A stretch of DNA of 64,000 nt from positions 162,699-226,698 of the IMG/VR virus record IMGVR_UViG_3300025098_000012; one strand, given 5' to 3'. The notes beneath the pieces were generated by a model. That model did no database searches and was not told where the DNA came from. It saw nothing but the letters and a program-made list of their open reading frames with translations. Below are positions 1,900-56,740 of the stretch, piece after piece. Positions within the stretch are counted from its first letter, which is position 1. The number at the start of each line of letters is the position of its first letter. Made by a program: the position numbers and the translations under genes.

Positions 1900-2379
1900 T
1901 TAAATAACCTCTATCATCCAACCACGACCTAGACCGCCACCAAAAGATCCACGAGATGTCTGTAAGTAATCTTTGATAGCATACGCTATATCAACATCAC
2001 CCTCAAAGCGATCTTCCAAGTCATGAATACCTGCGTTCATATATATATCATCCATCTCAACGGGATGGCTTGCTTCTACTGCTAATGCAAAGTCAAAAAG
2101 ACTCACATTGCAAGACCAATGGTTATCTGGACAGATAAAGTTGATCTTTGATCTTTCTCCATTAGGGATGATGTTTACAACACATCGACCTGTTGCTTGG
2201 CTTTTGACCATTGAAAGTAGCTCTTGGACTGTCATCCTCTCCACTTCGTTTCTTGGTGATCCTGTAGAGATTGACACCTTGATCTTCGAGCTTGCTGTAC
2301 GATTTGAAGCTGTTTTGGACTCAAGTCGAGCAATCCTTTGCTCAAGGTCTTTGATGATTTCACTAGCAGATCTTCTCAT
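1900..2379 (-). CDS. MRRSASE-leader cassette protein (putative virion-internal cargo)
   Basis: ATG at 2379 after GGAG RBS; leader MRRSASEIIKDLEQRIARLESKTASNRTAS; unrelated C-terminal payload. Confidence 0.8.
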   Translation of the reverse strand: MRRSASEIIKDLEQRIARLESKTASNRTASSKIKVSISTGSPRNEVERMTVQELLSMVKSQATGRCVVNIIPNGERSKINFICPDNHWSCNVSLFDFALAVEASHPVEMDDIYMNAGIHDLEDRFEGDVDIAYAIKDYLQTSRGSFGGGLGRGWMIEVI

Positions 2380-4695: not shown

Positions 4696-5103
4696 CTACA
4701 GGCTGTTTTTTGCTCTGCGAATAACAGCAGGAGATGAAAGTCGATCACCCTTATTAGCACCCTCAATGATAGCAACCCAAGCCTCAACTGGAGAACTCGC
4801 TCTCAACTTCTTCTGTAAAGCCTCTCCCCACACTTGAATGTCCTGTTTAGTCATTTTTTGTGACTTCCAAGAGATCTTCTCTGATCCACCTCTAGTGTAT
4901 TCTAGCGTCATGGTAAACATAGCAATACCATTATCATCTTCAACTGTAGCTGAGTATCCTTCATCACTTTCTACAACACGACCCATAACGAGCGTAGAAA
5001 ATGCCTCCTCAGACCAAGAAAAAGCAAAAGGATTTGCTTGCTTTTCAAGACGGGCGATTCTCATCTCAAGATTTCTGATTACTTCACTAGCTGATCTTCT
5101 CAT
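4696..5103 (-). CDS. MRRSASE-leader cassette protein
   Basis: Leader MRRSASEVIRNLEMRIARLEKQA; cassette UTR and late motif at 5104-5165. Confidence 0.8.
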   Translation of the reverse strand: MRRSASEVIRNLEMRIARLEKQANPFAFSWSEEAFSTLVMGRVVESDEGYSATVEDDNGIAMFTMTLEYTRGGSEKISWKSQKMTKQDIQVWGEALQKKLRASSPVEAWVAIIEGANKGDRLSSPAVIRRAKNSL

Positions 5104-5170: not shown

Positions 5171-5196
5171 CCCTAGATACAAAAAAACCCCATCTC
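5171..5196. repeat. 26-bp direct repeat (half terminator) identical to 6501-6526
   Basis: CCCTAGATACAAAAAAACCCCATCTC at both sites, flanking the LAGLIDADG gene and a membrane gene. Confidence 0.9.
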
Positions 5197-6106
5197 ACTC
5201 CACACCAAACTTAACCATCCAACGACCAATCGTACTCGCACCCACATCAAGATACTTGGCAATCCTACGCTGACTCCAACCCTTACTCCTTAAGTCCTCT
5301 AAGATGCCTTTGTCCATCTTCTTCTTGATAGCATTGTTGCGACCTTGAAAACCAAAGTCCAACTTGTAAGACATACAATCGGGTACATGAGGCTTAATGA
5401 TCTCAATGAAACGATCAGCGTTATCACCCTTAAAGTGAAACTCTCCTGCCTCCCCTTTTTTATGTGTCCAGTTAGGAGCTAAACCAAACTTCTCAAAGAT
5501 TAAGTAAGCGTTAGCTCGACTCCCCTGTTTTGCTCCAAAACAAATCTGAGGCCAATGTCCTGCATTACCATCATCGAGATACCACATAGCCAAAGCTAAC
5601 TCATCTACTTGGTCTATAACATCAGACTTAACAACTTTCCAACCCTTATCCCTATCCTCATAGAACAAGTCTCGATACTCATTAAGCATTGGGTGAGCGT
5701 GGGTGCGAAAGATATATGAGGTAAAATCTCGGCTCTTCGCTGTGGTTAACTCACCACTTGACCATTTGCCCCACTTCTCTTGCTTCCACTCAAGATACTC
5801 TTTCTGATTCGGTGCGTGTCGTTCCTCATAGTGTGAAGCGTTCGTTCTAAAGGCAATACGACCGTCACCTAGCATAGAACCAATAAGGATTGATCTTAAC
5901 TCCCCCTCAATCTTTGGTAGCTCAAGACGATCATATTTAGCCACTGTCTCAATCTCATAGCGTAGTCTCCAACTACGGACACGCTTTATGCTTGAGTCAA
6001 CACCCTCAGAAATCAACAAATCGTTAATCTGCTCCTGTGTTAAGTATTGCTTAGTATAGAGGTCTTCAAAACGCTCTTTAGATATAGGGCATGGTATCGC
6101 TCTCAT
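5195..6106 (-). mobile_element. Free-standing LAGLIDADG homing endonuclease with C-terminal HTH
   Basis: Two motifs, ILIGSMLGDG and LAMWYLDDG; terminal WSQRRIAKYLDVGASTIGRW; ATG at 6106 overlaps the upstream stop (ATGA). Confidence 0.85.
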
Positions 6107-6420
6107 AACCAACCACCCCCTAGATCCTCTTTTCCTGTCAGCAACCAATATACTGTCGCAATCATAAAAAGAGTCATACAGATAAGAAAGTACACAAATC
6201 CTACGATAACAAGTACCCCAATAGAGTTCAAGTTGAGATCAGAAAAGACAAAACCCCAAAAACCTTCCCAACTGAAGTAGCCAAGTAGCCCCCCTATGAC
6301 GAATCCTGTTAAACAAGTCATAAAGACAGACAAGTACAGGCTACACAAAGTAAGGAGGAACTTCCCTACCTTATGTACTAGGAAGCATACCCTGTTGAAG
6401 ATGCGTTCAAAAGCGTTCAT
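6103..6420 (-). CDS. Small membrane protein
   Basis: Two to three hydrophobic segments; GAGG RBS; coupled to the endonuclease gene. Confidence 0.65.
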   Translation of the reverse strand: MNAFERIFNRVCFLVHKVGKFLLTLCSLYLSVFMTCLTGFVIGGLLGYFSWEGFWGFVFSDLNLNSIGVLVIVGFVYFLICMTLFMIATVYWLLTGKEDLGGGWL

Positions 6421-6605: not shown

Positions 6606-7484
6606 TTAACGCTGTACAGTAAGACGAGCAAGACCACGAGGGTTGTAAGCTCCGATACCCAAGTTTTCAAAGACACTGAAGCCGATTGTACGAGCTTTAG
6701 GATCGTCAGCAGAAAGGACGGTCAACTCGGTACGAACAGGGATACGACCAAACATCTCTGGCTCACAGCAGACATAAACAGTTCCAACAGGAACAAGTCG
6801 GCTAGTGATGATCTGAGCACCCCAAAGGGTAGCCTGTAGACCAGTCTTGAGAAGTGCCGCTTGGCTCTCGATGTCGAGAATGTCACGACCGAACTTACGG
6901 ATGTCAGCGTAATCACGAGCATTCATGAATACACGAGCAACACGAAGGTCATGACGCTCAATGAGGCTGTATGCGTCAGCAAGAACAGCACCATTAAGAG
7001 GAGCGATAACAGGAATGTCAGCGTTAGTCTGACCTGCAACGCTATCAAATCCGTTAGCCGCAACTGCATCAAGGATAGCGAATACACGCTCGTCCTCAGC
7101 CGCTTGGATTTGAGCACGAGCAAGATCCTGAGCACGCTCGATAAGGTCGAACCTACGCTCTTTGATCTGTGTGAGTGGGATCTCTGGGTTAGAAGCGATC
7201 TCAAACAATGGGAAGATAACCCTGCGTGGCTTGGTGATAGCAAGGATGTTCTCACCCTCTTCACCAACTACGAAAGCAGTCACATCGGGATCTTTGTCGT
7301 AGATAGGTAAAGCACCATCTGGAAGTTGCTCGACTAAGAAAGTCTTACGACCAACAGAGGTGTAATCTCTACGAAGGCGAAGTGGTTGAGTCATTGAAGC
7401 GGCGAGCTTCGCACGACCCTGTGGAGTCTTAATGTAGTCAGAAATGATCTTCTGTTTTACGGCATTATCAACTGTATTACTCAT
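6606..7484 (-). CDS. Major capsid protein (HK97 fold)
   Basis: 292 aa; HK97-like pattern (VVGEEGE, FEIASNPEI, MNARDYADI, LWGAQIITS, ENLGIGAYNP); lies after protease, scaffold and decoration genes. Confidence 0.85.
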   Translation of the reverse strand: MSNTVDNAVKQKIISDYIKTPQGRAKLAASMTQPLRLRRDYTSVGRKTFLVEQLPDGALPIYDKDPDVTAFVVGEEGENILAITKPRRVIFPLFEIASNPEIPLTQIKERRFDLIERAQDLARAQIQAAEDERVFAILDAVAANGFDSVAGQTNADIPVIAPLNGAVLADAYSLIERHDLRVARVFMNARDYADIRKFGRDILDIESQAALLKTGLQATLWGAQIITSRLVPVGTVYVCCEPEMFGRIPVRTELTVLSADDPKARTIGFSVFENLGIGAYNPRGLARLTVQR

Positions 7485-8100: not shown

Positions 8101-8245
8101 GAGATTTCTCCTATTTAGCTCGTACTCTCTGTTTTCAAGAGAGTAGTGTTGTGTTGAAATAGGGTGGTCTTACAACCAACCCCGAAAAGGTTTTCCAATA
8201 TAATAGCGTCAGATATAAATAAACTATTACAAGTTTATCTATATC

Positions 8246-9814
8246 TTATCCGAAGAACTTGCTTACATCGGGAGCAGACTCCCAAAGTTTAGAAAGCTCA
8301 TCAGAAGCACTTGAAGCCTCACGAGAGATGTTACCGAGAGTCTTAACAGCCGCTTTACGAGCAGAGGTGCGTGGGCGATAAGAAGCCTTCTTATCAGCCT
8401 TTTCCTCTTTAGCCTCTTCCTCAGTAGCTTCTTCTTCGGTAGCTTCTTCTTCGGTAGCTTCTTCCTCAGTAGCTTCTTCCTCAGTAGCTTCTTCGGTAGA
8501 CTCTTCCTCAGCGTCTTCATCAGCCGCTGTGAAGATTGAAGCGAGGCGAGGGTCCATAGCCATTGCATCTTCTGCGTCCATGTCAAGACCCATGACATCT
8601 TCACCCATGCTCATTGTAGTTTCGACTTCTTCAGCAGTATATCCATACTCTGGATCATTCTGCTCACGAGTGTCATCTGCTTCAAGCTCTGCAAGGAGAG
8701 TTGCCATCTCATTATCAGCAGTAGTGTCCATGTCAGACATATAAGTTGAAAGAGCTTCTGCAAGACGCTCAATCTTTGCTAAACGCTGAGTAGGCTGACC
8801 CTCTGAAGGCTCACTAGCAGGAGCAGTCTCAAGTGCTACAGTGTCGTTCTGACCTTGATAGCCTGTACCAACTTGTACTGCGTTATCAGCGAGTTTACGA
8901 ACCTTGCGAGCAAGACGAGCATTAGCGGCTTTAAGAGTAGCGATTTCTTCTGCGAGAGCTTCGGCTGATGAAGAGTGATCCTCAGCCATCATCATAGCCT
9001 CGTGATCTTCAGCCATCAACATTGCTTCGTGATCTTCAGCTTCAAGATCAGCCATGATTTGTGAAAGCTCATCTTCTGCTTCAAGTTCGTCTGCGAAAGA
9101 CTCACCAAGACCAAGAGCGATTTCATCACGAGAAAGGAAGCCATCCTCATTCATATCAAGATCGTCAAAGATCTCGTCAGAGCCACCCCATTCGTCCATA
9201 GAAATCATGCCATCGCCATCGGTGTCATAAGCGTCAAACATAGAGTGACCCATGTGATCGTCAGCTTCTAGTTCATCACTTGCATTTCCTGGTCCTGTGA
9301 ATTCAAGACCTTCATCATACTCAGTTCCAACTTGTACAGCATTGTCAGCAAGACGAGCAACACGAGCATTAACAGTACGACTAGGAAGATCCATCATGCG
9401 AAGTGCAAGATCCTCGATCTCACGCTGTGAAGCAGTACGACCAAGACGACTTTCAGCGATGCGAATGCACTTAGCCGCTTTACGCTCCATAGCTTTTTTA
9501 AGGTTCTCTTGGCGAAGGTCATCAGTAAGAGCATAATCTTCAACAAGCTCATCGCTTACAGCAGGATGCTCTGGCTCCCAACCATAAGATGCAGGAGCAG
9601 GACCAGAACGGTAAGGTCCTTTACGGACTCCTTCACCGAACTCTGAGTCGAAGCCATACTGATCTACAGAAGGCTGATCGGATGAAGCAGGGTGACCGAA
9701 GTGATCCCAACCAAGATTATCGTATCCTGGGAGGCCAGAGTTTGCTCTGCGATTTCTTCTACGAGCAAGCTCTGCCCTGCGAGACATATTCTTAGAACGA
9801 GAATACCTAGACAT
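8246..9814 (-). CDS. Probable capsid scaffolding protein with an EF-hand pair
   Basis: Very acidic, coiled-coil-like, between protease and capsid genes; DTDGDGMISMDE and DMNEDGFLSRDE loops. Confidence 0.65.
   Translation of the reverse strand: MSRYSRSKNMSRRAELARRRNRRANSGLPGYDNLGWDHFGHPASSDQPSVDQYGFDSEFGEGVRKGPYRSGPAPASYGWEPEHPAVSDELVEDYALTDDLRQENLKKAMERKAAKCIRIAESRLGRTASQREIEDLALRMMDLPSRTVNARVARLADNAVQVGTEYDEGLEFTGPGNASDELEADDHMGHSMFDAYDTDGDGMISMDEWGGSDEIFDDLDMNEDGFLSRDEIALGLGESFADELEAEDELSQIMADLEAEDHEAMLMAEDHEAMMMAEDHSSSAEALAEEIATLKAANARLARKVRKLADNAVQVGTGYQGQNDTVALETAPASEPSEGQPTQRLAKIERLAEALSTYMSDMDTTADNEMATLLAELEADDTREQNDPEYGYTAEEVETTMSMGEDVMGLDMDAEDAMAMDPRLASIFTAADEDAEEESTEEATEEEATEEEATEEEATEEEATEEEAKEEKADKKASYRPRTSARKAAVKTLGNISREASSASDELSKLWESAPDVSKFFG
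8410..8510 (-). repeat. In-frame 15-bp tandem repeat encoding (EEEAT)n
   Basis: Repeated tcagtagcttcttc/tcggtagcttcttc units. Confidence 0.9.
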
Positions 9815-9852: not shown

Positions 9853-11292
9853 TTATTTCTGCCCGTAAGTGTTAAGGGATAAGAGTTTAGCTAATCTTAC
9901 AAGACGAAGAGTGTCTTGCTTCGACAGATTTTTACCATTTAAGTAGCTTGCTTGCTCCAGATAATCAACTACATCATTATACTGACTGGTTGAGCCGAGC
10001 AAACTAGCTAACTTATAAACATGGGTAGGAATCTGAACATTACAGTGATTATTCACTAGAGTTATGTTCAGTACAGCTTCTTCAACAGACTTAGCTGTTC
10101 TAACAGAAGCATCTAAGAGGCTCATGTACTTGGAAGCAGACATACCCTCTTTGACAATCGTATCGTTTTGTTCAACGACAGACTTATCAATAGGTGGGTT
10201 CATTACTTCTTGAGCCTTCTCTGCTTTGAGTTCGTTTTCTAGCTTTTGGCGAAAACGATCTACAATAGCAGTCTCGTAAACATTTTCGAGCTGTTTCAAC
10301 AAAGACTCGGAAGGTGCGTCAGCTTTATCATCACCACCTTCATCCTCATCCATGTCAAAAGGTCCAGCTTTCTTGTTTAGCTGACCATGAGGGTCATACC
10401 AAGGAGAACTCTGTAAACTAGACGCTTTAGCAATCCACTTCTGTGGAACTTCATTAAGTTGATCATCAGAAGCTGATTTAGCCATGTCAGCTTTAGGGAT
10501 GTCTAATACATTGCGAGCGACAGCTCCTACAAATGCAGGGGTTGCAACCCAAGATGCTTCGATGAATGTAACACCTGCTGTACCACCGATTTCTTCATGA
10601 CCACAAAGCTCTGCTACTCTATGTTGATTTCCTTGTTCATCATAGAAAACATTGCCTTTCTCATATTTGATATGAGAACACATCTCGGTTTCATCAGCGG
10701 CCACATGACCACATTTGGTGCAAATGGTAAAGTCTACGCTACATCCCATAGACATTGAGTTCATTTGACCCGACTCAATCTGTTTAACCAAGTCTTTGTG
10801 TTTGCGATCAGTAGCGACAAGGATGTCTACATATAAAGAATCACCGATGTCTCTAAGAACAGCATCAATGATCCGACCCTTAGATAGTTCTTCAACTTGG
10901 ATATGCTCAACAAAGTTATGAGCACCAATGAAGGTCTGATAAGATTTCTTAATCACACCTCTTGACCATGAGTCGAGGTTGTTATTGATGAACTTATCAG
11001 TGCCAGAGCTGACACGATAGTCAGCGTATTTACGATTAATAGTTTGTCCACCCTCAGTGATCGAGCCTGTCTTTGTGTTTGGAGGTGTGATTGCATCGAC
11101 AGAGCAAACGATAGTGGAGTGGGTAAGTAGAAATCTATCGGGAGTGAAAGGTTCGCCTAAGATGTCCTCTGCTTGCTTTTTGAGCGAAGCATTGATGGTT
11201 TTAGCACCAGAAGCGATCCTTACCTTATCCCATTGTAGACCATGAATGGAGGGCTGAACTACATTAGCCCTAGCATATCTTAAAAATGCCAT
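9853..11292 (-). CDS. Prohead (capsid maturation) serine protease with Cys/His insertion
   Basis: TFIGAHNFVEH, KGRIIDA, SMSMGC followed by CTKC-x-CSH, FIEASWVATPAF; head-operon position. Confidence 0.7.
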   Translation of the reverse strand: MAFLRYARANVVQPSIHGLQWDKVRIASGAKTINASLKKQAEDILGEPFTPDRFLLTHSTIVCSVDAITPPNTKTGSITEGGQTINRKYADYRVSSGTDKFINNNLDSWSRGVIKKSYQTFIGAHNFVEHIQVEELSKGRIIDAVLRDIGDSLYVDILVATDRKHKDLVKQIESGQMNSMSMGCSVDFTICTKCGHVAADETEMCSHIKYEKGNVFYDEQGNQHRVAELCGHEEIGGTAGVTFIEASWVATPAFVGAVARNVLDIPKADMAKSASDDQLNEVPQKWIAKASSLQSSPWYDPHGQLNKKAGPFDMDEDEGGDDKADAPSESLLKQLENVYETAIVDRFRQKLENELKAEKAQEVMNPPIDKSVVEQNDTIVKEGMSASKYMSLLDASVRTAKSVEEAVLNITLVNNHCNVQIPTHVYKLASLLGSTSQYNDVVDYLEQASYLNGKNLSKQDTLRLVRLAKLLSLNTYGQK

Positions 11293-11295
11293 GCT

Positions 11296-14200
11296 TTACC
11301 CCTTAACGATGTCGGAAGGTTTGATGATAAAGAGGCAGGTATAACAAGCGAGCAGTTTCTCACTCTTACCTCCTCTTCTTTTGTAAACAGTATTGCCGAG
11401 TGGAGTTTTACACTTGGGACAACAAGGTTTTTCCTCATTCCGACATTGGCGATAAGTACGATCTTTCTTATACCAATAAATAGCTTGCTTCATGTATCTG
11501 GAGGCAACACGATTAGCTTGCTTTTTGACGGCACGAGAAGTTACAGGAACAGTACCAGCTCCACCTGGTATAGTATCTTGATCGTCAGTATAAATGTTCA
11601 AGTAATCACCCGAAGTATCTACAACAAGATCTTCTACAGGATAGCGTTGCGATCCATGAGGGAACTGCACATCGACCATACCAATTGCAGGGAAGATAGC
11701 TATAACGAGTCCAGACCTTGACGGATTACCACCAAGAAAGGGGTATACACGCATCCCTAGCTCGAACGCTTGGGATCTACGCTGATAGTCAACATATTGT
11801 GTAGATCGTTTTTGCATGATTACAGTGCCTCCACTCTTATAGTAGGTGTCAATAAATGATCTATTAAAATTATTTGCTTGTTTATTTGATGAGGTAGACT
11901 CAATTTCTTGTGTCGCTGTGTCATCAAATAGCTCAGTAAGCCTACTTCTTATGTCTTTGAGCCTCTGTCTCTTAGTCGCACCATCTAAACTTTTCACTTT
12001 TTCTAGTTCTTGCTGTATCTGCTCCCATCTAAACTTTTTCGTGTTATCACTGTAGAGCTGAATACCGTCAATGCTACTCCGAGTTTCTTCAATTCTCCAT
12101 CTTGTCCTAAATTCTTCTCCAGCGGCTTCTCTCTCTTCTTCGGTGTATTCTTTACCAGTTGATAGATCAACACCATCAACGAACACCTCGAAAAACTTAT
12201 CTTTGTTTTCTCTCCAAAAGAGCTTCATTTGCTCTTTGACTTTCTTAGAAGGACCAGAGCTATCACCTTTAGGTTTGTAGTAGCCATCCCCCTTAGACTC
12301 TTTTTCGACAGTATGGAGATTAACGAAACCTCCACTCATGTAATCCCTTAACAGTTTCTTCATGTCATCAGACAATGGGTTAGGACAGGGATCATCTGAG
12401 GGGAGGAGCTTCTTGTCTCCCACACCTGCGGCGTTATTTGTAGGCCCACCAGGACAGTAGTCGTCATCTAATAAATCCAACATATCTCCATAAGGTCCTT
12501 GCTCACCTCCAACTACAGCTTTAAAATCTTCTGTGTCGAGGTTTTCAGTGACCGACTCAATCAAATCTCGTGTCTTACTAGGGTTAGTGCCTTGTTGGGA
12601 GAGCATACTGATGCCTTCTTCCCAAGCCTCTGATCCTGTTTGTCTTGCGAGTTCAAGTAATCGGTCGGGTACTTCGGCATACCCATCAATGACACCCTCA
12701 CTATTTATCATGCGTATTGTATTGAGGGCTGTTTCAGATGCTTTTAAGTTTACGAGCTTACCCTGTAATGATTTCTTTTCTTCATCAGACAGACCTTCCC
12801 CATCATTTTCTAGGAGTGCTTTTGCTTCACCAATCTCCTCTGCGACCCTTCCAACCATAGCATTACGCTGTTCTTCATTCATCTTCTTAAAGCGTCTGCC
12901 TTGAACTCTGCGTACATTCTGTAGGTGCTTCTCTTTATCGTGATCATCCCCATCAGTAGGGAACTCAAGTAGCCCGAACTCTGGATCTTCCACAATACTC
13001 TTTTGTGCATGGGTTGTTGCTAAGTAGCTACCTAGATTTTGTGCGTACTCCTTTTGAACAGCCTCATAGTTTTCTAAGTCTGATTTTAAGGAACTGAGAG
13101 AATCTTCTGCATCTTTCAAAGAATTCTTAAGTTGCTTTAGAGTTTCCTCATCTGTGTCATCGTCAGCTTCCGATAACTTTTGTTGAGCTTTATTCACCTT
13201 GTCGGTGGTTTCCTTAATGTCCTTATTGAGTTGTTCTACTGTAGGAGGAGGTGTGGGGGGCTTTAAATCCTTTGCCTCTTCGTCAATGTAAGACTGTAGA
13301 CCATCGAGTCCTTGATTTCTCATCACTTCTTCGACTTTGAATGCACCGGATCCGTAAGCCTGCACCATTTGTTGAACTTGATCTTCGGTCAACTCATCAA
13401 GTGCATCTACAGTTTCACTTATCCTTTGAATAAATGTGCGAGTGCTCTTTCTAGTTGATGCAAGATCCTTCTTCTCAAGTCCTTTGATTTGTTCCTTGAG
13501 ATCACGCTTCTCTTTATCGCTTAAAGAAGGATCTTCGAGCTTTTTTTCGAGATTCTCTATCTTCTCACTCGTGCCTTTGCTTAACTTATCCCTAAAGGCT
13601 TTCTCAAGGCGATCCTTGATTTCTGCCTTTTGGACATAGCTCGGCTGTTCCAATAAAGGAGCACCTTCAACAAACGGAGGTTCTTCTTTCGGAGGTGTAT
13701 CATCCCCCTTTGCGTCATCCTTTCCCGATTCATTTCTAGGTTTTGGCTCACCCTTACCTTTGCTTTTACCCTTGCCTTTGGGTTCTTCTTCTCCTGTTTG
13801 CTTCTCACGCTCTTTAGCTCTCTCGTCCAAGACATCTTTGGTTTCTTTTACTTCTTCTTCAGTAATGTCGGATGCCTCTTGAACATCAACCTCGACAGCA
13901 TCAATCCCCTCTTCTTCAAGAGATGTGGTGAGCTTTTCAGCGACTCTCTTTTTATAAGGACCTCGCTTTTTGCCTTTATCGGATCTTGTTTTTCTTTTCT
14001 TCTTAGGTGGTGGTTCACCTACTTCTTCCCGAACCTCCTCATGGATGTCCATAAGAAGAGCCATAATGTCTCTCATGGTGCGTTCTTCAACAAGAGACAT
14101 ATCTCTCATATCACGACCATTGTTCATCCTTGAGAGCAGGTCATATTGTTCATCATTGAGAGTAGCGGCTACGGAATAGCTGACATCACTAGAGTCTCCC

Positions 14201-14541
14201 TTAGACCCTCTAGCTTTATCCATAGCTTTGTTAAAGTCTTGGACAGCTTTTGGGTGGGCACGATTATAAGCTGTATTAAACGACAACTCATCACCTGTCA
14301 GCCTACTCTTATACTTACGACTTTTGAGCTTGTCTTTGACCTTCTTAACGATCTTCTGCTCTTTTTTCTGTTTCCTTTTCTGCTCTGGCGTGAGCTTTTG
14401 CTTCTTTCGCTTTTTCTTTTTAGTTGGCTTACGAGATCCGTCCTCACGCTTTTGAGAAGCCGCAACTCGGTGTGCCTCTAAAAGAAGGCGATCTGTTTTC
14501 TCTAGCTCCGTTTGGAGTTCTAGTAGAAGGCGACTAATCAT
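11296..14541 (-). CDS. Large charged virion-associated protein; C-terminal 173 aa probably also a separate gene (11296-11817)
   Basis: 1081-aa ORF; internal late motif at 11852, GGAGG at 11828-11832, ATG at 11817; C-terminal SH3-like segment, RVASRY tag and CxxC zinc ribbon. Confidence 0.7.
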   Translation of the reverse strand: MISRLLLELQTELEKTDRLLLEAHRVAASQKREDGSRKPTKKKKRKKQKLTPEQKRKQKKEQKIVKKVKDKLKSRKYKSRLTGDELSFNTAYNRAHPKAVQDFNKAMDKARGSKGDSSDVSYSVAATLNDEQYDLLSRMNNGRDMRDMSLVEERTMRDIMALLMDIHEEVREEVGEPPPKKKRKTRSDKGKKRGPYKKRVAEKLTTSLEEEGIDAVEVDVQEASDITEEEVKETKDVLDERAKEREKQTGEEEPKGKGKSKGKGEPKPRNESGKDDAKGDDTPPKEEPPFVEGAPLLEQPSYVQKAEIKDRLEKAFRDKLSKGTSEKIENLEKKLEDPSLSDKEKRDLKEQIKGLEKKDLASTRKSTRTFIQRISETVDALDELTEDQVQQMVQAYGSGAFKVEEVMRNQGLDGLQSYIDEEAKDLKPPTPPPTVEQLNKDIKETTDKVNKAQQKLSEADDDTDEETLKQLKNSLKDAEDSLSSLKSDLENYEAVQKEYAQNLGSYLATTHAQKSIVEDPEFGLLEFPTDGDDHDKEKHLQNVRRVQGRRFKKMNEEQRNAMVGRVAEEIGEAKALLENDGEGLSDEEKKSLQGKLVNLKASETALNTIRMINSEGVIDGYAEVPDRLLELARQTGSEAWEEGISMLSQQGTNPSKTRDLIESVTENLDTEDFKAVVGGEQGPYGDMLDLLDDDYCPGGPTNNAAGVGDKKLLPSDDPCPNPLSDDMKKLLRDYMSGGFVNLHTVEKESKGDGYYKPKGDSSGPSKKVKEQMKLFWRENKDKFFEVFVDGVDLSTGKEYTEEEREAAGEEFRTRWRIEETRSSIDGIQLYSDNTKKFRWEQIQQELEKVKSLDGATKRQRLKDIRSRLTELFDDTATQEIESTSSNKQANNFNRSFIDTYYKSGGTVIMQKRSTQYVDYQRRSQAFELGMRVYPFLGGNPSRSGLVIAIFPAIGMVDVQFPHGSQRYPVEDLVVDTSGDYLNIYTDDQDTIPGGAGTVPVTSRAVKKQANRVASRYMKQAIYWYKKDRTYRQCRNEEKPCCPKCKTPLGNTVYKRRGGKSEKLLACYTCLFIIKPSDIVKG

Positions 14542-14547
14542 TGCAGA

Positions 14548-15189
14548 CTACCCTCTCAAGTTAAGGAACTTACGAGCAACACGCTGTGCCATCTTCTCAC
14601 TTCTACGAGAAAGATCGGGATCACCTTTGTCTCCACGACCAACACCTTGTAGATCGGGGTCATCGCTAATTTGTACTCTGTTCTTACGGAGGTCTTTGCG
14701 AGGAGGCTTATTCTTAGGAGATCTCCTAACGAGCTTTTCAACTGCTTCGTCCTCTTTTTCAGCTTGGGTCTTAGTCGCTACTCTCTTGTGAGGACAGATA
14801 TATGAACTTGCCTTACGCTCCATACTCGCCATCTTGCGAACATCAAAGCAATGTCCTGCAAAACTCTTTCTGAGAACTCTAAGTGCTTGAGCGAGGATGA
14901 GGTAAAACCTATGAGCGTGTTCGCTCTCTCTGGTGTCTAGCCAAACAGCTTGGAGCTTTCTAACTTCTTCAGCTTTACCGTCTAAAACATCTACATATTT
15001 AAGCTCTTTATCAAGAGAGACAGCTTCCTCAAAAAGTGCTTCTATGGTGAGGAAATGCTTACGGATGCAGTCTGGACATCTTTTACGAGGTTGGTTAAGA
15101 TGATCTTCGAGTAGGACAATCTGTTTACAGATCTCTCGTAAGTTATATAAGGGACTCATAATCGGCAATAAACCTTGATCGTTGCTCAT
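14548..15189 (-). CDS. Late protein with CPDC motif and RVA tags
   Basis: ATG at 15189 with GAGG RBS; late motif at 15233; RKMAS, RKAS, RVATK and terminal RVARKFL. Confidence 0.7.
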   Translation of the reverse strand: MSNDQGLLPIMSPLYNLREICKQIVLLEDHLNQPRKRCPDCIRKHFLTIEALFEEAVSLDKELKYVDVLDGKAEEVRKLQAVWLDTRESEHAHRFYLILAQALRVLRKSFAGHCFDVRKMASMERKASSYICPHKRVATKTQAEKEDEAVEKLVRRSPKNKPPRKDLRKNRVQISDDPDLQGVGRGDKGDPDLSRRSEKMAQRVARKFLNLRG

Positions 15190-15319
15190 AACTACACCTC
15201 TTTTTTTTGGGATACTAACTACAAGTAGGAAATATAAACAAACTATTAAACTAAGAGAGCGTAACCCCTTATTTATATCTCTATGTAAGAACCACCAAAC
15301 ACTCTTAAAGGAGAACAAC

Positions 15320-15583
15320 ATGGGCAAGAAAAGACCAGATCAAGTGAAGCGAGTCCACGAGGCTTTGAAGATGAACGCTAAAGAGGCCAAGTACGGTATG
15401 CCGTACTGTAAGTGGCGAAAAGAAGAATCTCGTTGGGAGATCTCAGACGCTTCGGGTCGAGATGCGTCAATGTTCTTCTATCCCGAAGGGGAGCGTTGGA
15501 CTTATCAAGCTCCTTACTACGATGAGGAGGACTCAACCTTTAGTCGTTCACTTGGGAACGCCTACTGTTGTTACACAGGTTAA
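15320..15583 (+). CDS. Hypothetical protein
   Basis: AAGGAG RBS, ATG at 15320, GTAACCCCTTAT motif upstream. Confidence 0.7.
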   Translation: MGKKRPDQVKRVHEALKMNAKEAKYGMPYCKWRKEESRWEISDASGRDASMFFYPEGERWTYQAPYYDEEDSTFSRSLGNAYCCYTG

Positions 15584-22722: not shown

Positions 22723-22985
22723 TAAGCACCTGCGATGTGCTTGATTTCTTCTTCAACCCTCATGGAGAGCGTATACCAACGCTCTGCTAAGTCAGCATAG
22801 TAGCGATCCTCCACATCTCCTCTGAATGAAGGCATCTTTTCAAGTTCACGCTCCATCTCTTGCATAGCCTTTAAGACTTTTTCTGCCGACTTACGAATCG
22901 GTGTTGAAGATTGCTTCTGTTCAAGTCTAGCAATCCTAGACTCAAGATTTCTTATCGTTTCTTCCGCTGTTCTTCTCATGTTCAT
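22719..22985 (-). CDS. MRRxA-leader protein
   Basis: [26 protein letters not shown]; ATGA-coupled to the SOD stop. Confidence 0.7.
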
Positions 22986-49657: not shown

Positions 49658-50074
49658 TTACTTAGCAGGGATTGAGTTTGGCAGATTAGTGATTGTTTCA
49701 CTAATCCAATCATGACCACTATCTAACAAGTCTTCACCCCAAAAGCTAGGGTCAGAGATTTTCACTGTAATGCAAATGCAAGATTCACATTCCGATGTAG
49801 TTACAAAATCTTCAATCATCTGACTGTGGGGCCACTGATTGATAGAGGTTTTAAAATCTTCTACAGATCTTTTTAGGATCGCCCTGTTCATGTGCATGAA
49901 ACAAAGGTTAATTTTGTCTTCTTCATACTCACGATCATCTACCATGATGATAGCACGAGCATTACTTAATTTTGCTGTCTTTGCGGCAGACTTCGTTCTT
50001 CTTGAGGTGCTGTTTTCAAGTCGAGCAATACGATCTTCAAGATTTCTGATGGTTTCGTTTGCTGATCTTCTCAT
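49658..50074 (-). CDS. MRRSA-leader cassette protein
   Basis: MRRSANETIRNLEDRIARLENSTSRRTKSAAKTA; cassette UTR at 50075-50140. Confidence 0.8.
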   Translation of the reverse strand: MRRSANETIRNLEDRIARLENSTSRRTKSAAKTAKLSNARAIIMVDDREYEEDKINLCFMHMNRAILKRSVEDFKTSINQWPHSQMIEDFVTTSECESCICITVKISDPSFWGEDLLDSGHDWISETITNLPNSIPAK

Positions 50075-51860: not shown

Positions 51861-53584
51861 CTTTTTTTTTGATAAGAAGCTCTTCTACGACCACCACTCA
51901 TAGCACCCTCAAGTTTACGGATGAGTTTCTGTAGACCTGCAATGGCTTTACGAGTACGAACTTCAACAGGCTGACGACCTGCACGACCAGTTCCTTGAAT
52001 ACGATCAAGTGCGAGGCGAATGTCGTTCGCAGACTCTTGGGAAAGTTGATCTCGATTAGTGCCGAGTGAACGCTGTGTTGCCATGAGCTGTTGTACAGCT
52101 CGCTCATCAACGATACCGTTATCTTGGAATGAAGCAATCGCCGCACGAACAACAGAAACGGTATCTGTGATCATAGCTTGTGAGTAAGCAATGTCTTGGT
52201 TCTGCCACATTCCAGGATTTGAAGTAAGACCGATTGGATACGAGCCATAGAGAGGACCGCTCTTACGGTGTTCACCTCTCTGTGAATATGCAGAGACATA
52301 ACCCTTCTTGAGCTTAGACTTGAGCTGTTTAACAAAGAAAGCCTGTGCTTCATAAGAGTCCATAAATGATTTATCGGCTCTACGACCCGAAGAACCAAGA
52401 CGACCATAAAGGATTTCTACATCTGATCCGCTAACGACCATCTCGTAGAATTTGCTTTTGTTCTCGGACTCACCGATGAGATAAAGCATACAAGAGGTAG
52501 CCTCTGCCATTGAGCGACCCTCATGATAAGCTGTGCTTGAGCGAACACCTGCGAGTTGTGGCTCACCTGCGGCTTCACGATTCATGCTTGCAGTGCGATT
52601 GAGGTTTGCCTCAAGACGAGCGATCCTCATCTCAAGGTTACGGATTACTTCACTAGCTGATCTTCTCATTTGAGATCCTTTCTTTAGAAGCCTTCTGACT
52701 TCATCTTTAGAGTAAGAGTTGTCGAGCTTACGCTCATTACGATAGATGAGGTGACGCAAACGCTTACGCTCCTCATCATTGAGTGAATCAATGCCTCTAC
52801 GCTGACCTTTATTGATAAGCATAAAGTCATCACGCTCAAGATAGGCATTGGATTTAAGGTCTGCAAGTAGCTTAGATGCTGGAGATGACTGACTAGCAAT
52901 GATTTCTTCAACCACATTCATCTGTCTTTCAGAGAGCTGAATACGATCTTCAGCTTTAGACTTGAGTTGTGCCAAGAAACGATTACGAGGGTCGAGTTCA
53001 AGTGCCTTTTCAATACGGACAAGCTGATTACTTGTCTGATTACCAACCATTTGAGTTTGCATCAGTTTTTCGTCAAGCACTTCAATCTGTCTCTCGGAAA
53101 GCTCTCTACCACCCATAAACTGATCGTAGAGACTTCTGAAAAAACGATTAGTAGGTTGCATCGCAATCGCTTGGTTGAGCTTCGTTAAGATGTCTTGATC
53201 GGGATTCTCAATACGCTCTTCAGTTTCGATTAGGATTTCCTCAACCCTGTAGTGAAGGGGATCTCCTTGTTGAAGCTCATTTAAGATGTCTTTCCACCAA
53301 TCACTATTCGGATTAAGAGCAAGAACTGCTTGAACACGCTCAATGCTCTCTACATCTCTGAACTTACCTGGAAAGTCGATCTTGAGTTGGATGAGTCCAT
53401 CACTGATGGACATATCTCCAAGACTCCTTAACAGAGACACAAGAACATCTGGTCCTTTTTTGTTGAGTTTAACTTCAAAATCGTCAAAGTTAATCATGGC
53501 ATTGTCTCTACGAGACTCCATCTCAAGCATCTCTAGTGCTTCTTCTACTGTGGTATTGTAGAAATATATTTGATTGGCTTTCAT
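51854..53584 (-). CDS. Multidomain late protein: helical repeats + internal MRRSASE leader + WGR domain
   Basis: LSERQ repeats; MRRSASEVIRNLEMRIARLE; SKFYEMVVSGSDVEILYGRLGSSG...QLKSKLKKGY; late motif at 53623. Confidence 0.75.
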   Translation of the reverse strand: MKANQIYFYNTTVEEALEMLEMESRRDNAMINFDDFEVKLNKKGPDVLVSLLRSLGDMSISDGLIQLKIDFPGKFRDVESIERVQAVLALNPNSDWWKDILNELQQGDPLHYRVEEILIETEERIENPDQDILTKLNQAIAMQPTNRFFRSLYDQFMGGRELSERQIEVLDEKLMQTQMVGNQTSNQLVRIEKALELDPRNRFLAQLKSKAEDRIQLSERQMNVVEEIIASQSSPASKLLADLKSNAYLERDDFMLINKGQRRGIDSLNDEERKRLRHLIYRNERKLDNSYSKDEVRRLLKKGSQMRRSASEVIRNLEMRIARLEANLNRTASMNREAAGEPQLAGVRSSTAYHEGRSMAEATSCMLYLIGESENKSKFYEMVVSGSDVEILYGRLGSSGRRADKSFMDSYEAQAFFVKQLKSKLKKGYVSAYSQRGEHRKSGPLYGSYPIGLTSNPGMWQNQDIAYSQAMITDTVSVVRAAIASFQDNGIVDERAVQQLMATQRSLGTNRDQLSQESANDIRLALDRIQGTGRAGRQPVEVRTRKAIAGLQKLIRKLEGAMSGGRRRASYQKKSW

Positions 53585-54483: not shown

Positions 54484-54750
54484 ATGTCATTACCTAGAGA
54501 ACGAAAAAGAGCTGACTATCGAGTCATTGCTCGCATCTTGCAACTGAGTCATGGACAAGCAGATCCAAAAGACTCATTGCTTGAAAAGATTTCTAATGTA
54601 TTTAATCGTAATGGTGGCTCTTGGGTATTATTCTTTGAAGGACACCCAAAACACAGCAAGCTACTTAAAGTAGTGATAAAAGCTGTCGTAAAACATAAGA
54701 AGGATCAACATGAGCGAAGAACTAGAAGCCAAATCAGTTGGGAAGATTAA
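54484..54750 (+). CDS. Late hypothetical protein
   Basis: Late motif at 54438; GGGGG RBS. Confidence 0.6.
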   Translation: MSLPRERKRADYRVIARILQLSHGQADPKDSLLEKISNVFNRNGGSWVLFFEGHPKHSKLLKVVIKAVVKHKKDQHERRTRSQISWED

Positions 54751-56386
54751 ACCCCGATCAAAAGCGATCACTCGTAAGCTCAATCCTGCCGAGATGAAAT
54801 CGAGGGTCAAAGTGGCGATGACCACAGGAGGCTCTATGATGGGGTCGGGTGGGAACTTCTACTCACCAGAGTTATCTACTGACTTTCTTGAACTACCTCA
54901 AAGTCAAGACGAACAACGCAACTACTTTAGGTTCTTTTATCGCACTGACCCCTTCGTAGGACAGGCGATTGATCTACATACAGAGCTTCCCCTCTCTAAG
55001 ATCAGATTAGGGCTACCTAAAGCTCGCAACCGAGACATGGCTTATGAAGCACTTAGGTTCTGTGAAAAATGGGCGAAGCGAGTCGGACTACTTCACCGAC
55101 TCATAGAAATCTTACATGAGTTCAACCTGCTCGGTGAGGTTTTTGTTTTCTGTGAGGACAATAATCCAGATGTGCCTCAAGAGGTGACACATAGTGGTCG
55201 GAATGTTCTTAAAGAAGATGGCGAAGCGTTTACTGAGTGGACTGAGTATGAGGACTCCCATGAACGAGCTTACAAGTGGCTCAAGAGGAACTATAAAGGG
55301 TGGACAGGTGTTCGTATCCTCCCTCCCGAACAAGTTCACATGGAGAGTTTTCCTTTCACTAGTGAGAAGATCATTCAACTTATTCCCGATAGTAAAACTC
55401 GTGATGTAGTTGAACGAGCTTCGGTTAATGATCCCTCTGCTCTTCGTATTGTAGACTCAATGCCAGGAGATGTTGTAGAAGCTATTCGAGATGGTCGCAA
55501 CATTGACCTCAATACTGATCCCGATCAAGGATCATTCGTTTATTATATGGCTCGTAAGAAATCACAATATGAACCTCGTGGACACTCTATGCTTGAGCGT
55601 TGTCTTCGTATCCTCGTTTATCGAGATAAATTAAGACAAGCCCAAACTTCTATCGCTTCAAGACACATGACTCCTATCCGACTCGTATATGCAGAGGATA
55701 TGGATGCGTCTGATGTTGAAGAGTTGAGAGATCAAGTGGATCTTGCACTACAAGATCCAGACTATTCTATCATCGCTAACTTCCAAGTCTCTTGGGAAGA
55801 GATGGGTGCTGACTCTCGTTTGCTTGAACTATCGGGCGAATATGATATGACAGACCGACAGATGTATGCAGGTCTAGGTGTTACAGAATCTCTGTTATCT
55901 GGTGAGTCTAGTTATAGTGGCGATAGGATCAACTTAGAAGTCATCAACACACGCTATATGCTTATGCGTGAGGTTCTTCAAGAGATGGTTGAAGAGAACA
56001 TCTTGAAGCCAATGTGTAGACGAATGGGTTTCGTTGAAATAGATGAAGATGGTGATGAGGTTGTAGTACACCCAACCCTTAGCTTCACTCGACTTGGATT
56101 GCGTGATAATCAAGATACCTTTGACGCTCTCTTTAACCTGTATCAGAAGGGTTCATTGGACATTGATGTGATCCTAGAACTCCTCAATGTAGATCCTATG
56201 ACAACTAAGGCTAAACTTGAGCGTGATATGTGGACACTCAATGACTCTCAGTTTAACGAAGTTCTGAGAGGGGTCTATGGTGAAGCAGGTCGTATGTTAG
56301 CCGAGAACACAGAAGCGATTGAGATCATCGCTAAGAATCTTGGATTAAAGTACAACCCACCAGAAGATGACGGTGGTCGTTTCTAA
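54710..56386 (+). CDS. Portal protein
   Basis: 558 aa; FFYRTDPFVGQAIDLHTELPLS, EFNLLGEVF, GHSMLERC, QAQTSIA, GVTESLLSGE are typical of large-phage portals. Confidence 0.75.
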   Translation: MSEELEAKSVGKIKPRSKAITRKLNPAEMKSRVKVAMTTGGSMMGSGGNFYSPELSTDFLELPQSQDEQRNYFRFFYRTDPFVGQAIDLHTELPLSKIRLGLPKARNRDMAYEALRFCEKWAKRVGLLHRLIEILHEFNLLGEVFVFCEDNNPDVPQEVTHSGRNVLKEDGEAFTEWTEYEDSHERAYKWLKRNYKGWTGVRILPPEQVHMESFPFTSEKIIQLIPDSKTRDVVERASVNDPSALRIVDSMPGDVVEAIRDGRNIDLNTDPDQGSFVYYMARKKSQYEPRGHSMLERCLRILVYRDKLRQAQTSIASRHMTPIRLVYAEDMDASDVEELRDQVDLALQDPDYSIIANFQVSWEEMGADSRLLELSGEYDMTDRQMYAGLGVTESLLSGESSYSGDRINLEVINTRYMLMREVLQEMVEENILKPMCRRMGFVEIDEDGDEVVVHPTLSFTRLGLRDNQDTFDALFNLYQKGSLDIDVILELLNVDPMTTKAKLERDMWTLNDSQFNEVLRGVYGEAGRMLAENTEAIEIIAKNLGLKYNPPEDDGGRF

Positions 56387-56446: not shown

Positions 56447-56740
56447 ATGAGAAGATCTGCTAGTGAAACTATTAGAAATCTTGAAGATCGTATCGCTCGC
56501 CTTGAAGGTAAGACAGCGAAAATCAACCTCAAATCCCTTGCCAAGCACATAAGTAAAAAAAGAAGCGATGGTACTGGTACTGTTGGCTTTGTGGAATATG
56601 ACGCACGAAGCCAAACAGTAATTTTCCTCAATGGGGACTATGAAGATATAGTAGTACCTGTAGACAAGTTGTTAGCTCAACTTATCCGAGAGGAGATGGG
56701 TAATGACCTGTATGACTTAGAGGGCAACACTATCAGTTAA
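56447..56740 (+). CDS. MRRSASE-leader cassette protein (plus strand; track strand label is wrong)
   Basis: ATGAGAAGATCTGCTAGT at 56447 reads MRRSAS on the + strand, ending TAA at 56738-56740. Confidence 0.85.
   Translation: MRRSASETIRNLEDRIARLEGKTAKINLKSLAKHISKKRSDGTGTVGFVEYDARSQTVIFLNGDYEDIVVPVDKLLAQLIREEMGNDLYDLEGNTIS

What the first reader, a model, noticed from the sequence alone, without database searches (positions are those of the whole stretch)
9853..11292. Genome-wide [KR]-x-A/S processing code matched to the prohead protease
Seen: KTAS, RTAS, KQAN, KSAS, RKAS, KVAS, KLAD/RLAD, KKAG and KKTS sites fall at domain boundaries in scaffold, protease, the 1081-aa protein, cassette proteins and the 58-64 kb proteins. 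Paralogous modules begin right after them (KKA|GLIRPPKHIVD, KKTS|GLIRPPKHIVD). They are not conspicuous in nrdA/B, guaC or dnaX. Established: assemblin-fold maturation proteases (herpesvirus, related to phage prohead proteases) cut after Ala before Ser. Inference: the protease cuts [KR]-x-A|(S/G/small) to release cargo modules inside the head.
Basis: partly seen in the sequence, partly recalled or inferred. Interest (0 to 1): 0.8.

Follow-up and report, generated by a model that had tools for sequence, protein, structure and literature searches.

The report
Predicted capsid protease cut-site code
In this uncultured giant phage, a short Lys/Arg-x-Ala-(Ser/Gly) motif marks the places where head proteins and a family of leader-tagged cargo proteins are probably cut by the capsid maturation protease; this resembles the T4 and herpesvirus schemes but uses a new motif, and no experiment has yet shown the cutting.

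Summary
ORF 9853-11292 (-) is a head-maturation protease with invariant H130 and S181 (the MSMG motif). It lies between a 1081-aa protein and an acidic scaffold, followed by a 292-aa major capsid protein.

- **Every cited tetrapeptide exists.** The core [KR]-x-A-[S/G] is enriched.
- **Unbiased scan.** R.AS is the top of 8000 a.bc patterns in the non-enzyme proteins.
- **Late genes.** Genes behind a promoter-like DNA motif carry 23 sites against 7.6 expected from shuffles. All other genes carry 13 against 13.9.
- **Conservation.** P3 and P1 stay fixed while P2 varies. This holds in the protease's disordered linker (K in 109 and A in 101 of 116 homologues), before the scaffold's conserved C-terminal tail, and at the fusion junction of the 1081-aa protein.
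- **Leader family.** A 20-aa N-terminal leader (MRRSASExIRNLExRIARLE) fronts 57 otherwise unrelated proteins. In 46 of them [KR]-x-A follows within eight residues.
- **Distant relatives.** A 485-kb relative has a different leader that also ends in [KR]-x-A. Phage G, Tunturi_5 and Bxz1 keep K-x-A-S/G just after their protease domains.

Cleavage itself, the enzyme responsible and the assemblin fold remain inferred. I rate this a new variant of a known kind.

The parts
9853..11292 (-). Head-maturation protease, 479 aa: catalytic domain about residues 35-263, disordered linker 264-337, helical C-terminal domain 386-471
   Evidence: phrog_18299 head maturation protease, E = 1.8e-15. 1576 metagenomic homologues. 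AlphaFold models. Gene order 1081-aa protein, protease, scaffold, MCP.
10750..10905 (-). Codons from H130 (10903-10905) to S181 (10750-10752, the MSMG motif): the putative catalytic His and Ser
   Evidence: Both residues are invariant in 33-40 homologues. hhalign places S181 on HK97 gp4 position 114 in its MSVGF motif, which from memory is the catalytic Ser114, and on T4 gp21 position 140, which from memory is the catalytic Ser140. Both E-values are weak.
10282..10503 (-). Protease linker (residues 264-337) with three candidate self-cleavage sites: KSA|S (10468-10479), KAS|S (10417-10428) and KKA|G (10363-10374)
   Evidence: pLDDT is below 50 over residues 264-337. Among 116 homologues the column of K289 is K in 109, P2 varies (A44, S37, V16, T7), P1 is A in 101 and P1' is S in 73. 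Site density is 2.56 per 100 aa in the linker against 0.44 in the catalytic domain.
8246..9814 (-). Acidic scaffold-like protein, 522 aa, with an EF-hand. Conserved candidate sites: RRA|N (9740-9751), RTA|S (9428-9439), RLA|D (9344-9355), KLA|D (8885-8896), RLA|S (8537-8548) and KKA|S (8381-8392)
   Evidence: EF-hand Pfam hits. In the alignment of 16 orthologues G[KR]xAS has x = T, R, N, Y, S, F or K, and KKAS/KKAA is kept in all 16, including the 43%-identical relative.
8249..8383 (-). Scaffold C-terminal tail (residues 478-522) downstream of KKA|S. It is the best-conserved part of the scaffold and is presumed to be the capsid-binding tail.
   Evidence: One search shows the tail nearly invariant while the rest of the scaffold diverges. 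The MCP is 87-100% conserved. That the tail binds the capsid is inferred by analogy with the herpesvirus M-site.
11296..14541 (-). 1081-aa protein: a variable Lys/Glu-rich N-terminal region of about 886 aa fused to a conserved C-terminal domain of about 190 aa. Candidate site KQA|N lies at 11872-11883.
   Evidence: Orthologues carry KQAN, KKAS, RTAN or RVAG at the same column. In L001, L027 and L012 the C-terminal domain is a stand-alone gene of 180-216 aa.
14548..15327 (-). 259-aa protein, the first gene of the head operon. It has KMA|S (14824-14835) and RKA|S (14806-14817) at a point where relatives carry large insertions.
   Evidence: The promoter-like motif lies at 15233-15246.
2260..2379 (-). 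Leader copy 1: the 20-aa leader followed by S-KTA|S-NRTA|S, at the N-terminus of gene 1900-2415
4984..5103 (-). Leader copy 2: leader followed by KQA|N, gene 4696-5139
22860..22979 (-). Leader copy 3 (MRRTAEE variant), gene 22719-23009. The nearest [KR]xA (RKSA|E) lies 10 residues downstream, making this a weaker case.
49955..50074 (-). Leader copy 4: leader followed by NSTSRRT-KSA|A, gene 49658-50074
52550..52669 (-). Leader copy 5, internal (residues 314-333) to the 584-aa WGR-domain protein 51854-53608, followed by ANLN-RTA|S
   Evidence: The promoter-like motif sits upstream of the full ORF at 53623-53636.
56447..56566 (+). Leader copy 6: leader followed by G-KTA|K, gene 56411-56740
60585..60596 (+). 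KKA|G junction in front of the GLIRPPKHIVD paralogous module in the 653-aa HExxH protein
62788..62799 (+). KKTS|G junction in front of the second GLIRPPKHIVD module (ORF 62326 to the end of the window)
6606..7484 (-). Major capsid protein, 292 aa, with no delta domain and no [KR]xA[SG] site. Predicted to stay uncut.
   Evidence: phrog_2522, E = 2e-51. Zero sites.
54710..56386 (+). Portal protein, 558 aa, with no site
   Evidence: phrog_16240, E = 8e-32. Zero sites.

Best explanation
The phage encodes a serine prohead protease of the phage G gp19 / Bxz1 gp95 family. Its preferred substrate motif is Lys/Arg at P3, any residue (mostly polar) at P2, Ala (rarely Ser) at P1, and Ser or Gly (less often Asn, Ala, Lys) at P1'.

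Inside the procapsid the protease is proposed to do four things:
1. It frees its own catalytic domain by cutting in the disordered linker at residues 272-310.
2. It chops the acidic scaffold and detaches it from its conserved C-terminal tail at KKA|S.
3. It separates the conserved C-terminal domain of the 1081-aa protein from its Lys/Glu-rich extension.
4. It removes a 20-residue amphipathic N-terminal leader from a large family of small, unrelated cargo proteins. The leader acts as a capsid-targeting sequence.

What is shown: the motif exists, it is restricted to late genes, it is conserved in position with a free P2, and the leader families exist.

What is inferred: that cleavage happens, which enzyme does it, and that the leader targets proteins to the capsid.
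For: **Enrichment in this window**
- R.AS is the top of 8000 patterns in non-enzyme proteins.
- Late-set genes carry 23 sites vs 7.6 from shuffles; all other genes carry 13 vs 13.9.

**Conservation at predicted positions**
- Protease linker site across 116 homologues: K 94%, A 87%, S 63%, with P2 free. It lies in a region with pLDDT below 50.
- Scaffold G[KR]xAS and KKAS are conserved down to 43% protease identity.
- The 1081-aa junction site is conserved with variable P2 and coincides with a gene-fusion boundary.

**Leader families**
- 57 distinct leader proteins share only the leader.
- 46 of 57 have [KR].A starting at residues 21-28, against 41 of 516 control windows. The spacing between leader and site varies.
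- LR745208.1 has a different 28-aa leader in 10 genes. It ends in [KR][ETQ]A and conservation stops right after the Ala.

**Distant and cultured relatives**
- K-x-A-S/G follows the protease domain in phage G gp19 (KVA|S, KIA|S), Tunturi_5 gp331 (KVA|S) and Bxz1 gp95 (KTA|G).
- LR745208.1 lacks any ClpP-like homologue yet keeps the sites.

**Shell proteins**
- MCP and portal have no sites.
Against: - There are no proteomic or biochemical data for any member of this protease family.
- Fold assignment is weak and there is no Pfam match.
- Many matches are unlikely to be cut: RSAS at leader residues 3-6, the conserved RVAS-x-Y-[LM] helices, and KLAS in the folded C-terminal domain.
- Paralogy and orthology make the site counts non-independent.
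- 11 of 57 leader proteins lack [KR].A near the leader.
- The whole-genome excess in LR745208.1 is only about 1.26-fold.
- In that relative the [KR]xA is at a fixed position in 9 of the 10 copies, so it could simply be the last residues of the conserved leader.
Confidence: 0.6

Rival explanations
1. The motif is a real, conserved short linear motif with a non-proteolytic role. It could be a docking or helix-capping element that tethers proteins to scaffold, portal or shell, or a basophilic Ser-phosphorylation site of the [KR]-x-x-S type. The leaders would then be permanent assembly or oligomerisation tags.
For: - RVA[SH]-x-Y-[LM] recurs as a conserved helix-like element with P2 fixed as Val, at the termini of six or more proteins.
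- RSAS sits inside the leader itself.
- The leader has a heptad-like I/L pattern and resembles a scaffold segment (CIRIAESRLGRTAS).
Against: - P1' is often Gly, Lys, Arg or Asn rather than Ser, which argues against a phospho-acceptor.
- Ala at P1 is the best-conserved position.
- The sites lie in disordered linkers and at conservation or fusion boundaries rather than inside the conserved elements.
- Multiple redundant copies in the protease linker fit processing better than docking.
Confidence: 0.17
2. The sites are cleaved, but by another enzyme: the ClpP-like protease (50108-50824), one of the HExxH proteins (58.5-64 kb), or a host protease. The 479-aa protein would be only a substrate, or would have a different specificity.
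For: - The ClpP-like gene matches head-maturation protease families (phrog_94, E = 4e-43).
- In relatives it lies within about 4 kb downstream of the MCP gene.
- Phage G packages ClpP and ClpX in virions (PMC12484599).
- Three paralogues carry HExxH motifs.
Against: - LR745208.1 keeps the scaffold sites and a [KR]xA-ending leader family but has no detectable ClpP-like or HExxH-paralogue homologue.
- K-x-A-S/G directly after the catalytic domain is shared by distant members of the 479-aa family in very different hosts. That pattern is typical of autoprocessing.
Confidence: 0.13
3. The signal is mostly an artefact of composition and shared ancestry. Lys/Ala/Ser-rich linkers and repeated paralogous modules would inflate the counts, and the junction residues would simply be the end of a recombining cassette made of promoter plus 5' coding region.
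For: - Four of the six leader genes share about 60 nt of upstream DNA as well as the leader.
- The loose motif is not enriched window-wide.
- The excess in LR745208.1 is weak.
Against: - The excess survives leader masking and within-protein shuffling.
- P2 varies while P3 and P1 are kept across 43-96% identity.
- Spacing between leader and site varies from 0 to 7 residues.
- An unrelated leader in a distant genome ends the same way.
Confidence: 0.1

Closest known systems
Bacteriophage T4 gp21 prohead protease with the capsid-targeting sequence (CTS) of the internal proteins (IPI-III, Alt)
   Same: A short conserved N-terminal leader is shared by otherwise unrelated packaged proteins and ends at the protease's consensus site. 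The scaffold is degraded and the protease processes itself. The cargo genes are diverse and hypervariable (my knowledge of T4; reviewed in PMC3012670 and PMC9026906, listed but not opened).
   Different: The T4 motif is Leu/Ile-x-Glu with cleavage after Glu, and its CTS is about 10 residues. Here the motif is [KR]-x-Ala followed by Ser/Gly and the leader is a 20-residue amphipathic helix. T4's MCP is itself cleaved, whereas the MCP here has no delta domain and no site. Sequence similarity to gp21 is not significant.
Herpesvirus assemblin (pUL26/pUL80a) with its R-site and M-site
   Same: Cleavage after Ala and before Ser. One site releases the protease domain from a C-terminal extension, and another lies a few tens of residues from the scaffold C-terminus and detaches the capsid-binding tail. 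The positions match the KSA|S / K-x-A|S linker sites and the scaffold KKA|S site. The herpesvirus consensus (V/L/I)-x-A|S is from my own knowledge.
   Different: P3 is basic here rather than aliphatic. Protease and scaffold are separate genes, not nested ones. The protease has a zinc-ribbon insert after the catalytic Ser. The structural match is weak: HCMV protease ranks 6th at E = 0.49.
phiKZ gp175 / SPN3US gp245 giant-phage prohead proteases
   Same: Many head and ejection proteins of a giant phage lose N-terminal propeptides at a simple three-residue motif. Multiple motif copies occur within propeptides (PMC10052503).
   Different: My recollection is that their motif ends in Glu (S/A/G-x-E). 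Those proteases are T4 gp21-like, and that work rests on mass spectrometry, whereas this finding is purely computational.
HK97 gp4 (family S78) prohead protease
   Same: The best, though weak, profile alignment puts MSMGC of the window protease on MSVGF of gp4, and H130 falls next to gp4 position 65, which from memory is the catalytic His.
   Different: No significant sequence or Pfam match. HK97 removes a delta domain from its MCP and has no cargo leader system.

Membership tests
Phage head-maturation (prohead) serine protease | Sequence match to an annotated prohead protease family | tested here: met
   phrog_18299 'head maturation protease', E = 1.8e-15, residues 103-261. tblastn hits to annotated head maturation proteases of Tunturi_5, BcepSauron, Stormageddon and Lauda. 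These annotations are computational, not experimental.
Phage head-maturation (prohead) serine protease | Gene lies in the head module next to scaffold and major capsid protein | tested here: met
   Order in relatives: portal, 259-aa protein, 1081-aa protein, protease, scaffold, 197-aa protein, MCP. The same core order is in the window.
Phage head-maturation (prohead) serine protease | Conserved catalytic His and Ser | tested here: inconclusive
   H130, H165 and S181 are invariant in 33-40 homologues. S181 aligns to the residues I recall as the catalytic Ser of HK97 gp4 and T4 gp21, but at E = 0.014 and 0.11. Catalysis was not tested.
Phage head-maturation (prohead) serine protease | Demonstrated cleavage of head proteins | not testable with these tools
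   No proteomic or biochemical data were found for this family.
Herpesvirus assemblin / HK97 gp4 / T4 gp21 fold | Three-dimensional fold similarity to solved assemblin-like proteases | tested here: inconclusive
   The model has pLDDT 72.5. The Foldseek top PDB hit is T4 gp21 5jbl (E = 0.04, probability 0.66, TM 0.28/0.42). HCMV protease 1nju ranks 6th (E = 0.49). No hit reaches E <= 0.001.
Herpesvirus assemblin / HK97 gp4 / T4 gp21 fold | Sequence or profile membership (Pfam S21, S77, S78) | tested here: not met
   No Pfam protease family matched the window protein or any of 33 homologues, even at E <= 10. There were no PDB sequence hits.
T4-type capsid-targeting sequence system | Short N-terminal leader shared by otherwise unrelated proteins | tested here: met
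   Six copies in the window. 166 stretches and 57 distinct proteins in viral contigs share only residues 1-20.
T4-type capsid-targeting sequence system | Leader ends at the protease consensus site | tested here: met
   46 of 57 have [KR].A starting at residues 21-28, against 8% of control windows. The consensus itself is inferred from the protease, scaffold and 1081-aa alignments, not measured.
T4-type capsid-targeting sequence system | Leader directs packaging into the prohead and is removed | not testable with these tools
   This needs virion proteomics or reporter-packaging experiments.

The most novel reading that the evidence does not exclude
Cutting after Ala and before Ser/Gly, as herpesvirus assemblin does, may be a shared and possibly ancestral trait of a very large, uncharacterised branch of prohead proteases. 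That branch includes phage G, mycobacteriophage cluster C, Tunturi_5 and abundant aquatic giant phages. Lineage-specific leader peptides ending in [KR]-x-A would then define each phage's whole set of packaged and injected proteins. The ejected effector repertoire of uncultured giant phages could in that case be read directly from sequence.
Probability: 0.35. Interest if true: 0.75.

Novelty: new variant of a known kind. Interest (0 to 1): 0.6.

Why it matters
If the motif is a true cut site, four things follow.

1. It gives the first substrate specificity for a widespread prohead protease family that has no Pfam model and no biochemistry.
2. It links phage and herpesvirus maturation more closely, through cleavage after Ala before Ser and through R-site-like and M-site-like positions.
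3. It supplies a sequence rule (leader plus [KR]-x-A) that picks out packaged cargo proteins in uncultured giant phages. These are mostly small proteins of unknown function and are plausible early-acting or anti-defence effectors.
4. It offers a compact tag for loading foreign proteins into large capsids.

The predictions can be tested at once in cultured relatives (phage G, Tunturi_5, Bxz1).

Tried and rejected
- **Family and structure searches that found nothing.** Pfam scans of the protease alone and of 33 homologues gave no protease family, only a zinc-ribbon insert. PDB sequence and profile searches gave nothing relevant. Megablast of the head module against cultured phages gave no match.
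- **Whole-genome replication in LR745208.1.** K.AS and R.AS are only about 1.26-fold over expectation and rank far from the top. The 'genome-wide' claim therefore does not replicate at that level. The replication came instead from that genome's own leader family.
- **MRRSAS-type leader in LR745208.1.** A search found none.
- **Literature.** Searches for cleavage specificity of phage G gp19, Bxz1 gp95, BcepSauron or Tunturi_5 found nothing. One search was poorly targeted and wasted.
- **Sec or Tat signal peptide reading of the leader.** Rejected, because the leader has no hydrophobic core.
- **Kinase-site reading.** Considered unlikely, because P1' is often not Ser.
- **MCP processing at KLA|A (residue 28).** Considered and not adopted. 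The MCP is already the size of a mature HK97-fold protein, and the site lies within fully conserved sequence.
Full report
**Context**

The window is identical to part of IMG/VR contig UViG_3300025098_000012, which is 226.7 kb. Its closest record among deposited phages is the 485-kb uncultured phage LR745208.1, with 43% protease identity.

The minus strand between 6.6 and 15.3 kb holds a head module:
- a 259-aa protein
- a 1081-aa protein
- the 479-aa ORF of the finding (9853-11292)
- a 522-aa acidic protein with an EF-hand, in the scaffold position
- a 197-aa protein
- a 292-aa major capsid protein (phrog_2522, E = 2e-51)

The portal is elsewhere in the window (54710-56386). In relatives it lies just upstream of the same module. 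The rest of the window is largely replication and nucleotide-metabolism genes: DnaX, RNR large and small subunits, an IMPDH-like protein with an intein, adenylosuccinate synthetase, and UvrD, RecD and SNF2 helicases.

**The protease**

The ORF matches phrog_18299 'head maturation protease' (E = 1.8e-15). It belongs to a large unnamed family with 1576 metagenomic proteins at E <= 1e-5.

Cultured members include phage G gp19, mycobacteriophage Bxz1 gp95 and the rest of cluster C, Tunturi_5 gp331, BcepSauron and Erwinia jumbo phages.

There is no Pfam or PDB sequence match.

An AlphaFold model of residues 1-270 has pLDDT 72.5. Its best PDB neighbour is T4 gp21 (E = 0.04, probability 0.66), and HCMV protease ranks 6th. 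hhalign puts S181 on the MSVGF serine of HK97 gp4 (position 114) and on position 140 of T4 gp21. From memory these are the catalytic serines. Significance is poor for both alignments.

So 'prohead serine protease' is well supported by family, position and conserved residues. 'Assemblin fold' is plausible but not established here.

**Is the motif more than chance?**

All quoted tetrapeptides exist.
- The loosest reading, [KR].[AT][SNDG], is at background over the whole window: 81 vs 72.
- The tight core is not at background: [KR].AS is 33 vs 11.0.
- In a scan of all 8000 a.bc patterns, R.AS is the single most over-represented pattern in proteins without an enzyme annotation (18 vs 3.3, P = 1.4e-8). 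It is unremarkable in the enzymes.

The DNA word ATAGTTTATTTATA occurs 15 times against 0.87 expected. It lies upstream of the head operon, the portal operon and the small 'cassette' genes.

With the paralogous leaders masked, genes behind this word hold 23 [KR].A[SG] against 7.6 +/- 2.7 from within-protein shuffles (0 of 2000 shuffles reach 23). All remaining genes hold 13 against 13.9. MCP, portal, NrdA, NrdB, the IMPDH-like protein and DnaX have none.

**Comparative evidence at individual sites**

Thirty related loci were retrieved (58-94% protease identity), plus LR745208.1. Across them the MCP is 87-100% identical while the scaffold and the 1081-aa protein diverge quickly. That contrast makes conserved islands informative.

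*Scaffold.*
- G[KR]xAS at residue 126 keeps K/R, A and S, with x = T, R, N, Y, S, F or K.
- KKAS (or KKAA) at residue 475 is present in all 16 distinct orthologues. It follows an acidic low-complexity run directly and precedes the best-conserved segment, the 45-residue C-terminal tail.

*Protease.*
- The full-length model shows a confident catalytic domain, a region with pLDDT below 50 from residue 264 to 337, and a confident helical C-terminal domain.
- All three candidate sites (KSA|S 272, KAS|S 289, KKA|G 307) fall in the disordered stretch.
- Across 116 homologues the 289-292 columns read K in 109, then a variable residue (A44, S37, V16, T7), then A in 101, then S in 73. The neighbouring columns are variable.
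- Site density in the linker is about six times that in the catalytic domain.

*1081-aa protein.*
- KQA|N at residue 887 appears as KQAN, KKAS, RTAN or RVAG in orthologues.
- It lies about 23 residues upstream of a domain that is a separate gene of 180-216 aa in three other lineages. It therefore marks a fusion junction.

*58-64 kb paralogues.*
- The BLASTP alignment between the two proteins begins exactly at the GLIRPP module, after KKA and after KKTS.

**The leader family**

Six genes in the window carry MRR[ST]A[SNE]ExI[RK][ND]LExRIARLE. It is at the N-terminus in five of them and internal in the WGR-domain protein.

A scan of viral contigs found 166 such stretches, several per genome, giving 57 distinct proteins. 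Fifty-four of these, 90 residues or longer, were aligned. They share nothing beyond residue 20: mean column identity is 10%, and the Pfam hits are two with WGR and one with cupin/JmjC domains.

In 46 of 57, [KR].A begins at residues 21-28, at variable offsets. The comparison figure is 41 of 516 control windows in the same proteins. P2 is T, Q or S. P1' is S (17), G (10), K (5), R (4) or N (3).

LR745208.1 has no such leader. It does have a different one, M(T)TLRSKLIRLAHENPALRPQLLPLL-[KR][ETQ]A, in 10 genes, and similarity stops right after the Ala. That genome has no ClpP-like homologue.

**Distant cultured relatives**

K-x-A-S/G follows the catalytic domain in:
- phage G gp19 (KVA|S and KIA|S)
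- Tunturi_5 gp331 (KVA|S)
- Bxz1 gp95 (KTA|G)

The Tunturi_5 scaffold-position protein also has KQA|G and KVA|S near its C-terminus.

**Interpretation**

The pattern is what a maturation-protease code looks like:
- self-release sites in the protease linker
- several scaffold sites, including one that detaches the conserved tail
- removal of a targeting leader from diverse cargo
- no sites in the shell or portal proteins

It works like T4's CTS with gp21 and like the herpesvirus R-site and M-site, but with a new consensus.

I put 0.6 on this reading. The rest is split between three alternatives:
- a non-proteolytic linear motif
- cleavage by another protease (a ClpP-like gene at 50108-50824 and three HExxH paralogues are present)
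- inflation by composition and shared ancestry

Not every match can be a cut site. RSAS at leader residues 3-6, the RVA[SH]-x-Y-[LM] element with fixed Val, and KLAS inside the folded C-terminal domain are better read as structural or docking features.

No experimental cleavage data exist for any family member in the searchable literature. The proposal is therefore a prediction, and it can be tested directly in phage G, Tunturi_5 or Bxz1.

Noticed in passing
window 50108-50824 (-): A second, ClpP-like protease (phrog_94 'head maturation protease', E = 4e-43). In relatives L020, L022 and L031 it lies about 4 kb downstream of the MCP gene. It is absent from LR745208.1.
   Followed up: partly
window 2427-2440, 5151-5164, 8214-8227, 15233-15246, 53623-53636, 56386-56399 and 9 more sites: Promoter-like word ATAGTTTATTTATA, 15 hits (up to 2 mismatches) against 0.87 expected. 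It lies upstream of the head, portal and leader-bearing genes. Four leader genes also share about 60 nt of upstream sequence including a GGAGA ribosome-binding site.
   Followed up: partly
window 11491-11511 (-), and also in 14548-15327 (C-terminus), 23608-24183 and 39199-39753 (N-termini), 58520-60382, 60375-62336 (C-terminus), and 62326 to the window end (two copies): A second recurring short element, (K)RVA[SHQR]-x-[YF]-[LM]. It is often preceded directly by a [KR]xA[SNQ] match, and Val is conserved in orthologues. It may be a docking helix, and it resembles part of the LR745208.1 leader (KLIRLAHENP).
   Followed up: partly
window 9188-9244 (-), scaffold residues 191-209: The scaffold-like protein has an EF-hand calcium-binding motif (PF13202, E = 1.7e-9) that is conserved in most orthologues. 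This is unusual for a scaffolding protein.
   Followed up: no
window 58520-63999 (+): Three large paralogous proteins carry HExxH (zincin-like) motifs, two motifs in the first protein. They are built from modules separated by [KR]xA/S junctions, and no family match was found.
   Followed up: partly
window 10597-10743 (-), protease residues 184-232: A Cys/His-rich zinc-ribbon-like insert directly follows the putative catalytic Ser. It is conserved across homologues (12 of 33 match Zn_ribbon_3).
   Followed up: no
window 21238-22722 (+): The IMPDH/GMP-reductase-like gene is interrupted by a Hint (intein) domain at residues about 189-326. One protease homologue elsewhere (P0087) also carries an intein.
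   Followed up: no
window 5195-6148 (-) and 36258-37394 (-): A LAGLIDADG homing endonuclease lies immediately downstream of the MCP gene, and a second homing-endonuclease-like gene lies next to the RNR small subunit.
   Followed up: no
LR745208.1, loci L032-L041 (for example record positions 15260, 20726, 31271, 226080, 275652, 351549, 351847, 390939, 398566, 433288): Ten genes share a 28-aa N-terminal leader, M(T)TLRSKLIRLAHENPALRPQLLPLL[KR][ETQ]A, followed by unrelated sequence.
   Followed up: yes
window 51854-53608 (-): In this 584-aa WGR-domain protein the leader is internal (residues 314-333). The promoter-like word lies upstream of the full ORF, so the N-terminal 313 residues may be a separate module released by cleavage.
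   Followed up: partly
L125 (Bxz1 gp95) and L027:585-8180: In some relatives the head-module proteins are giant fusions. Bxz1 gp95 is 1370 aa with the protease domain at its N-terminus. The L027 homologue of the 259-aa protein is 2531 aa.
   Followed up: no
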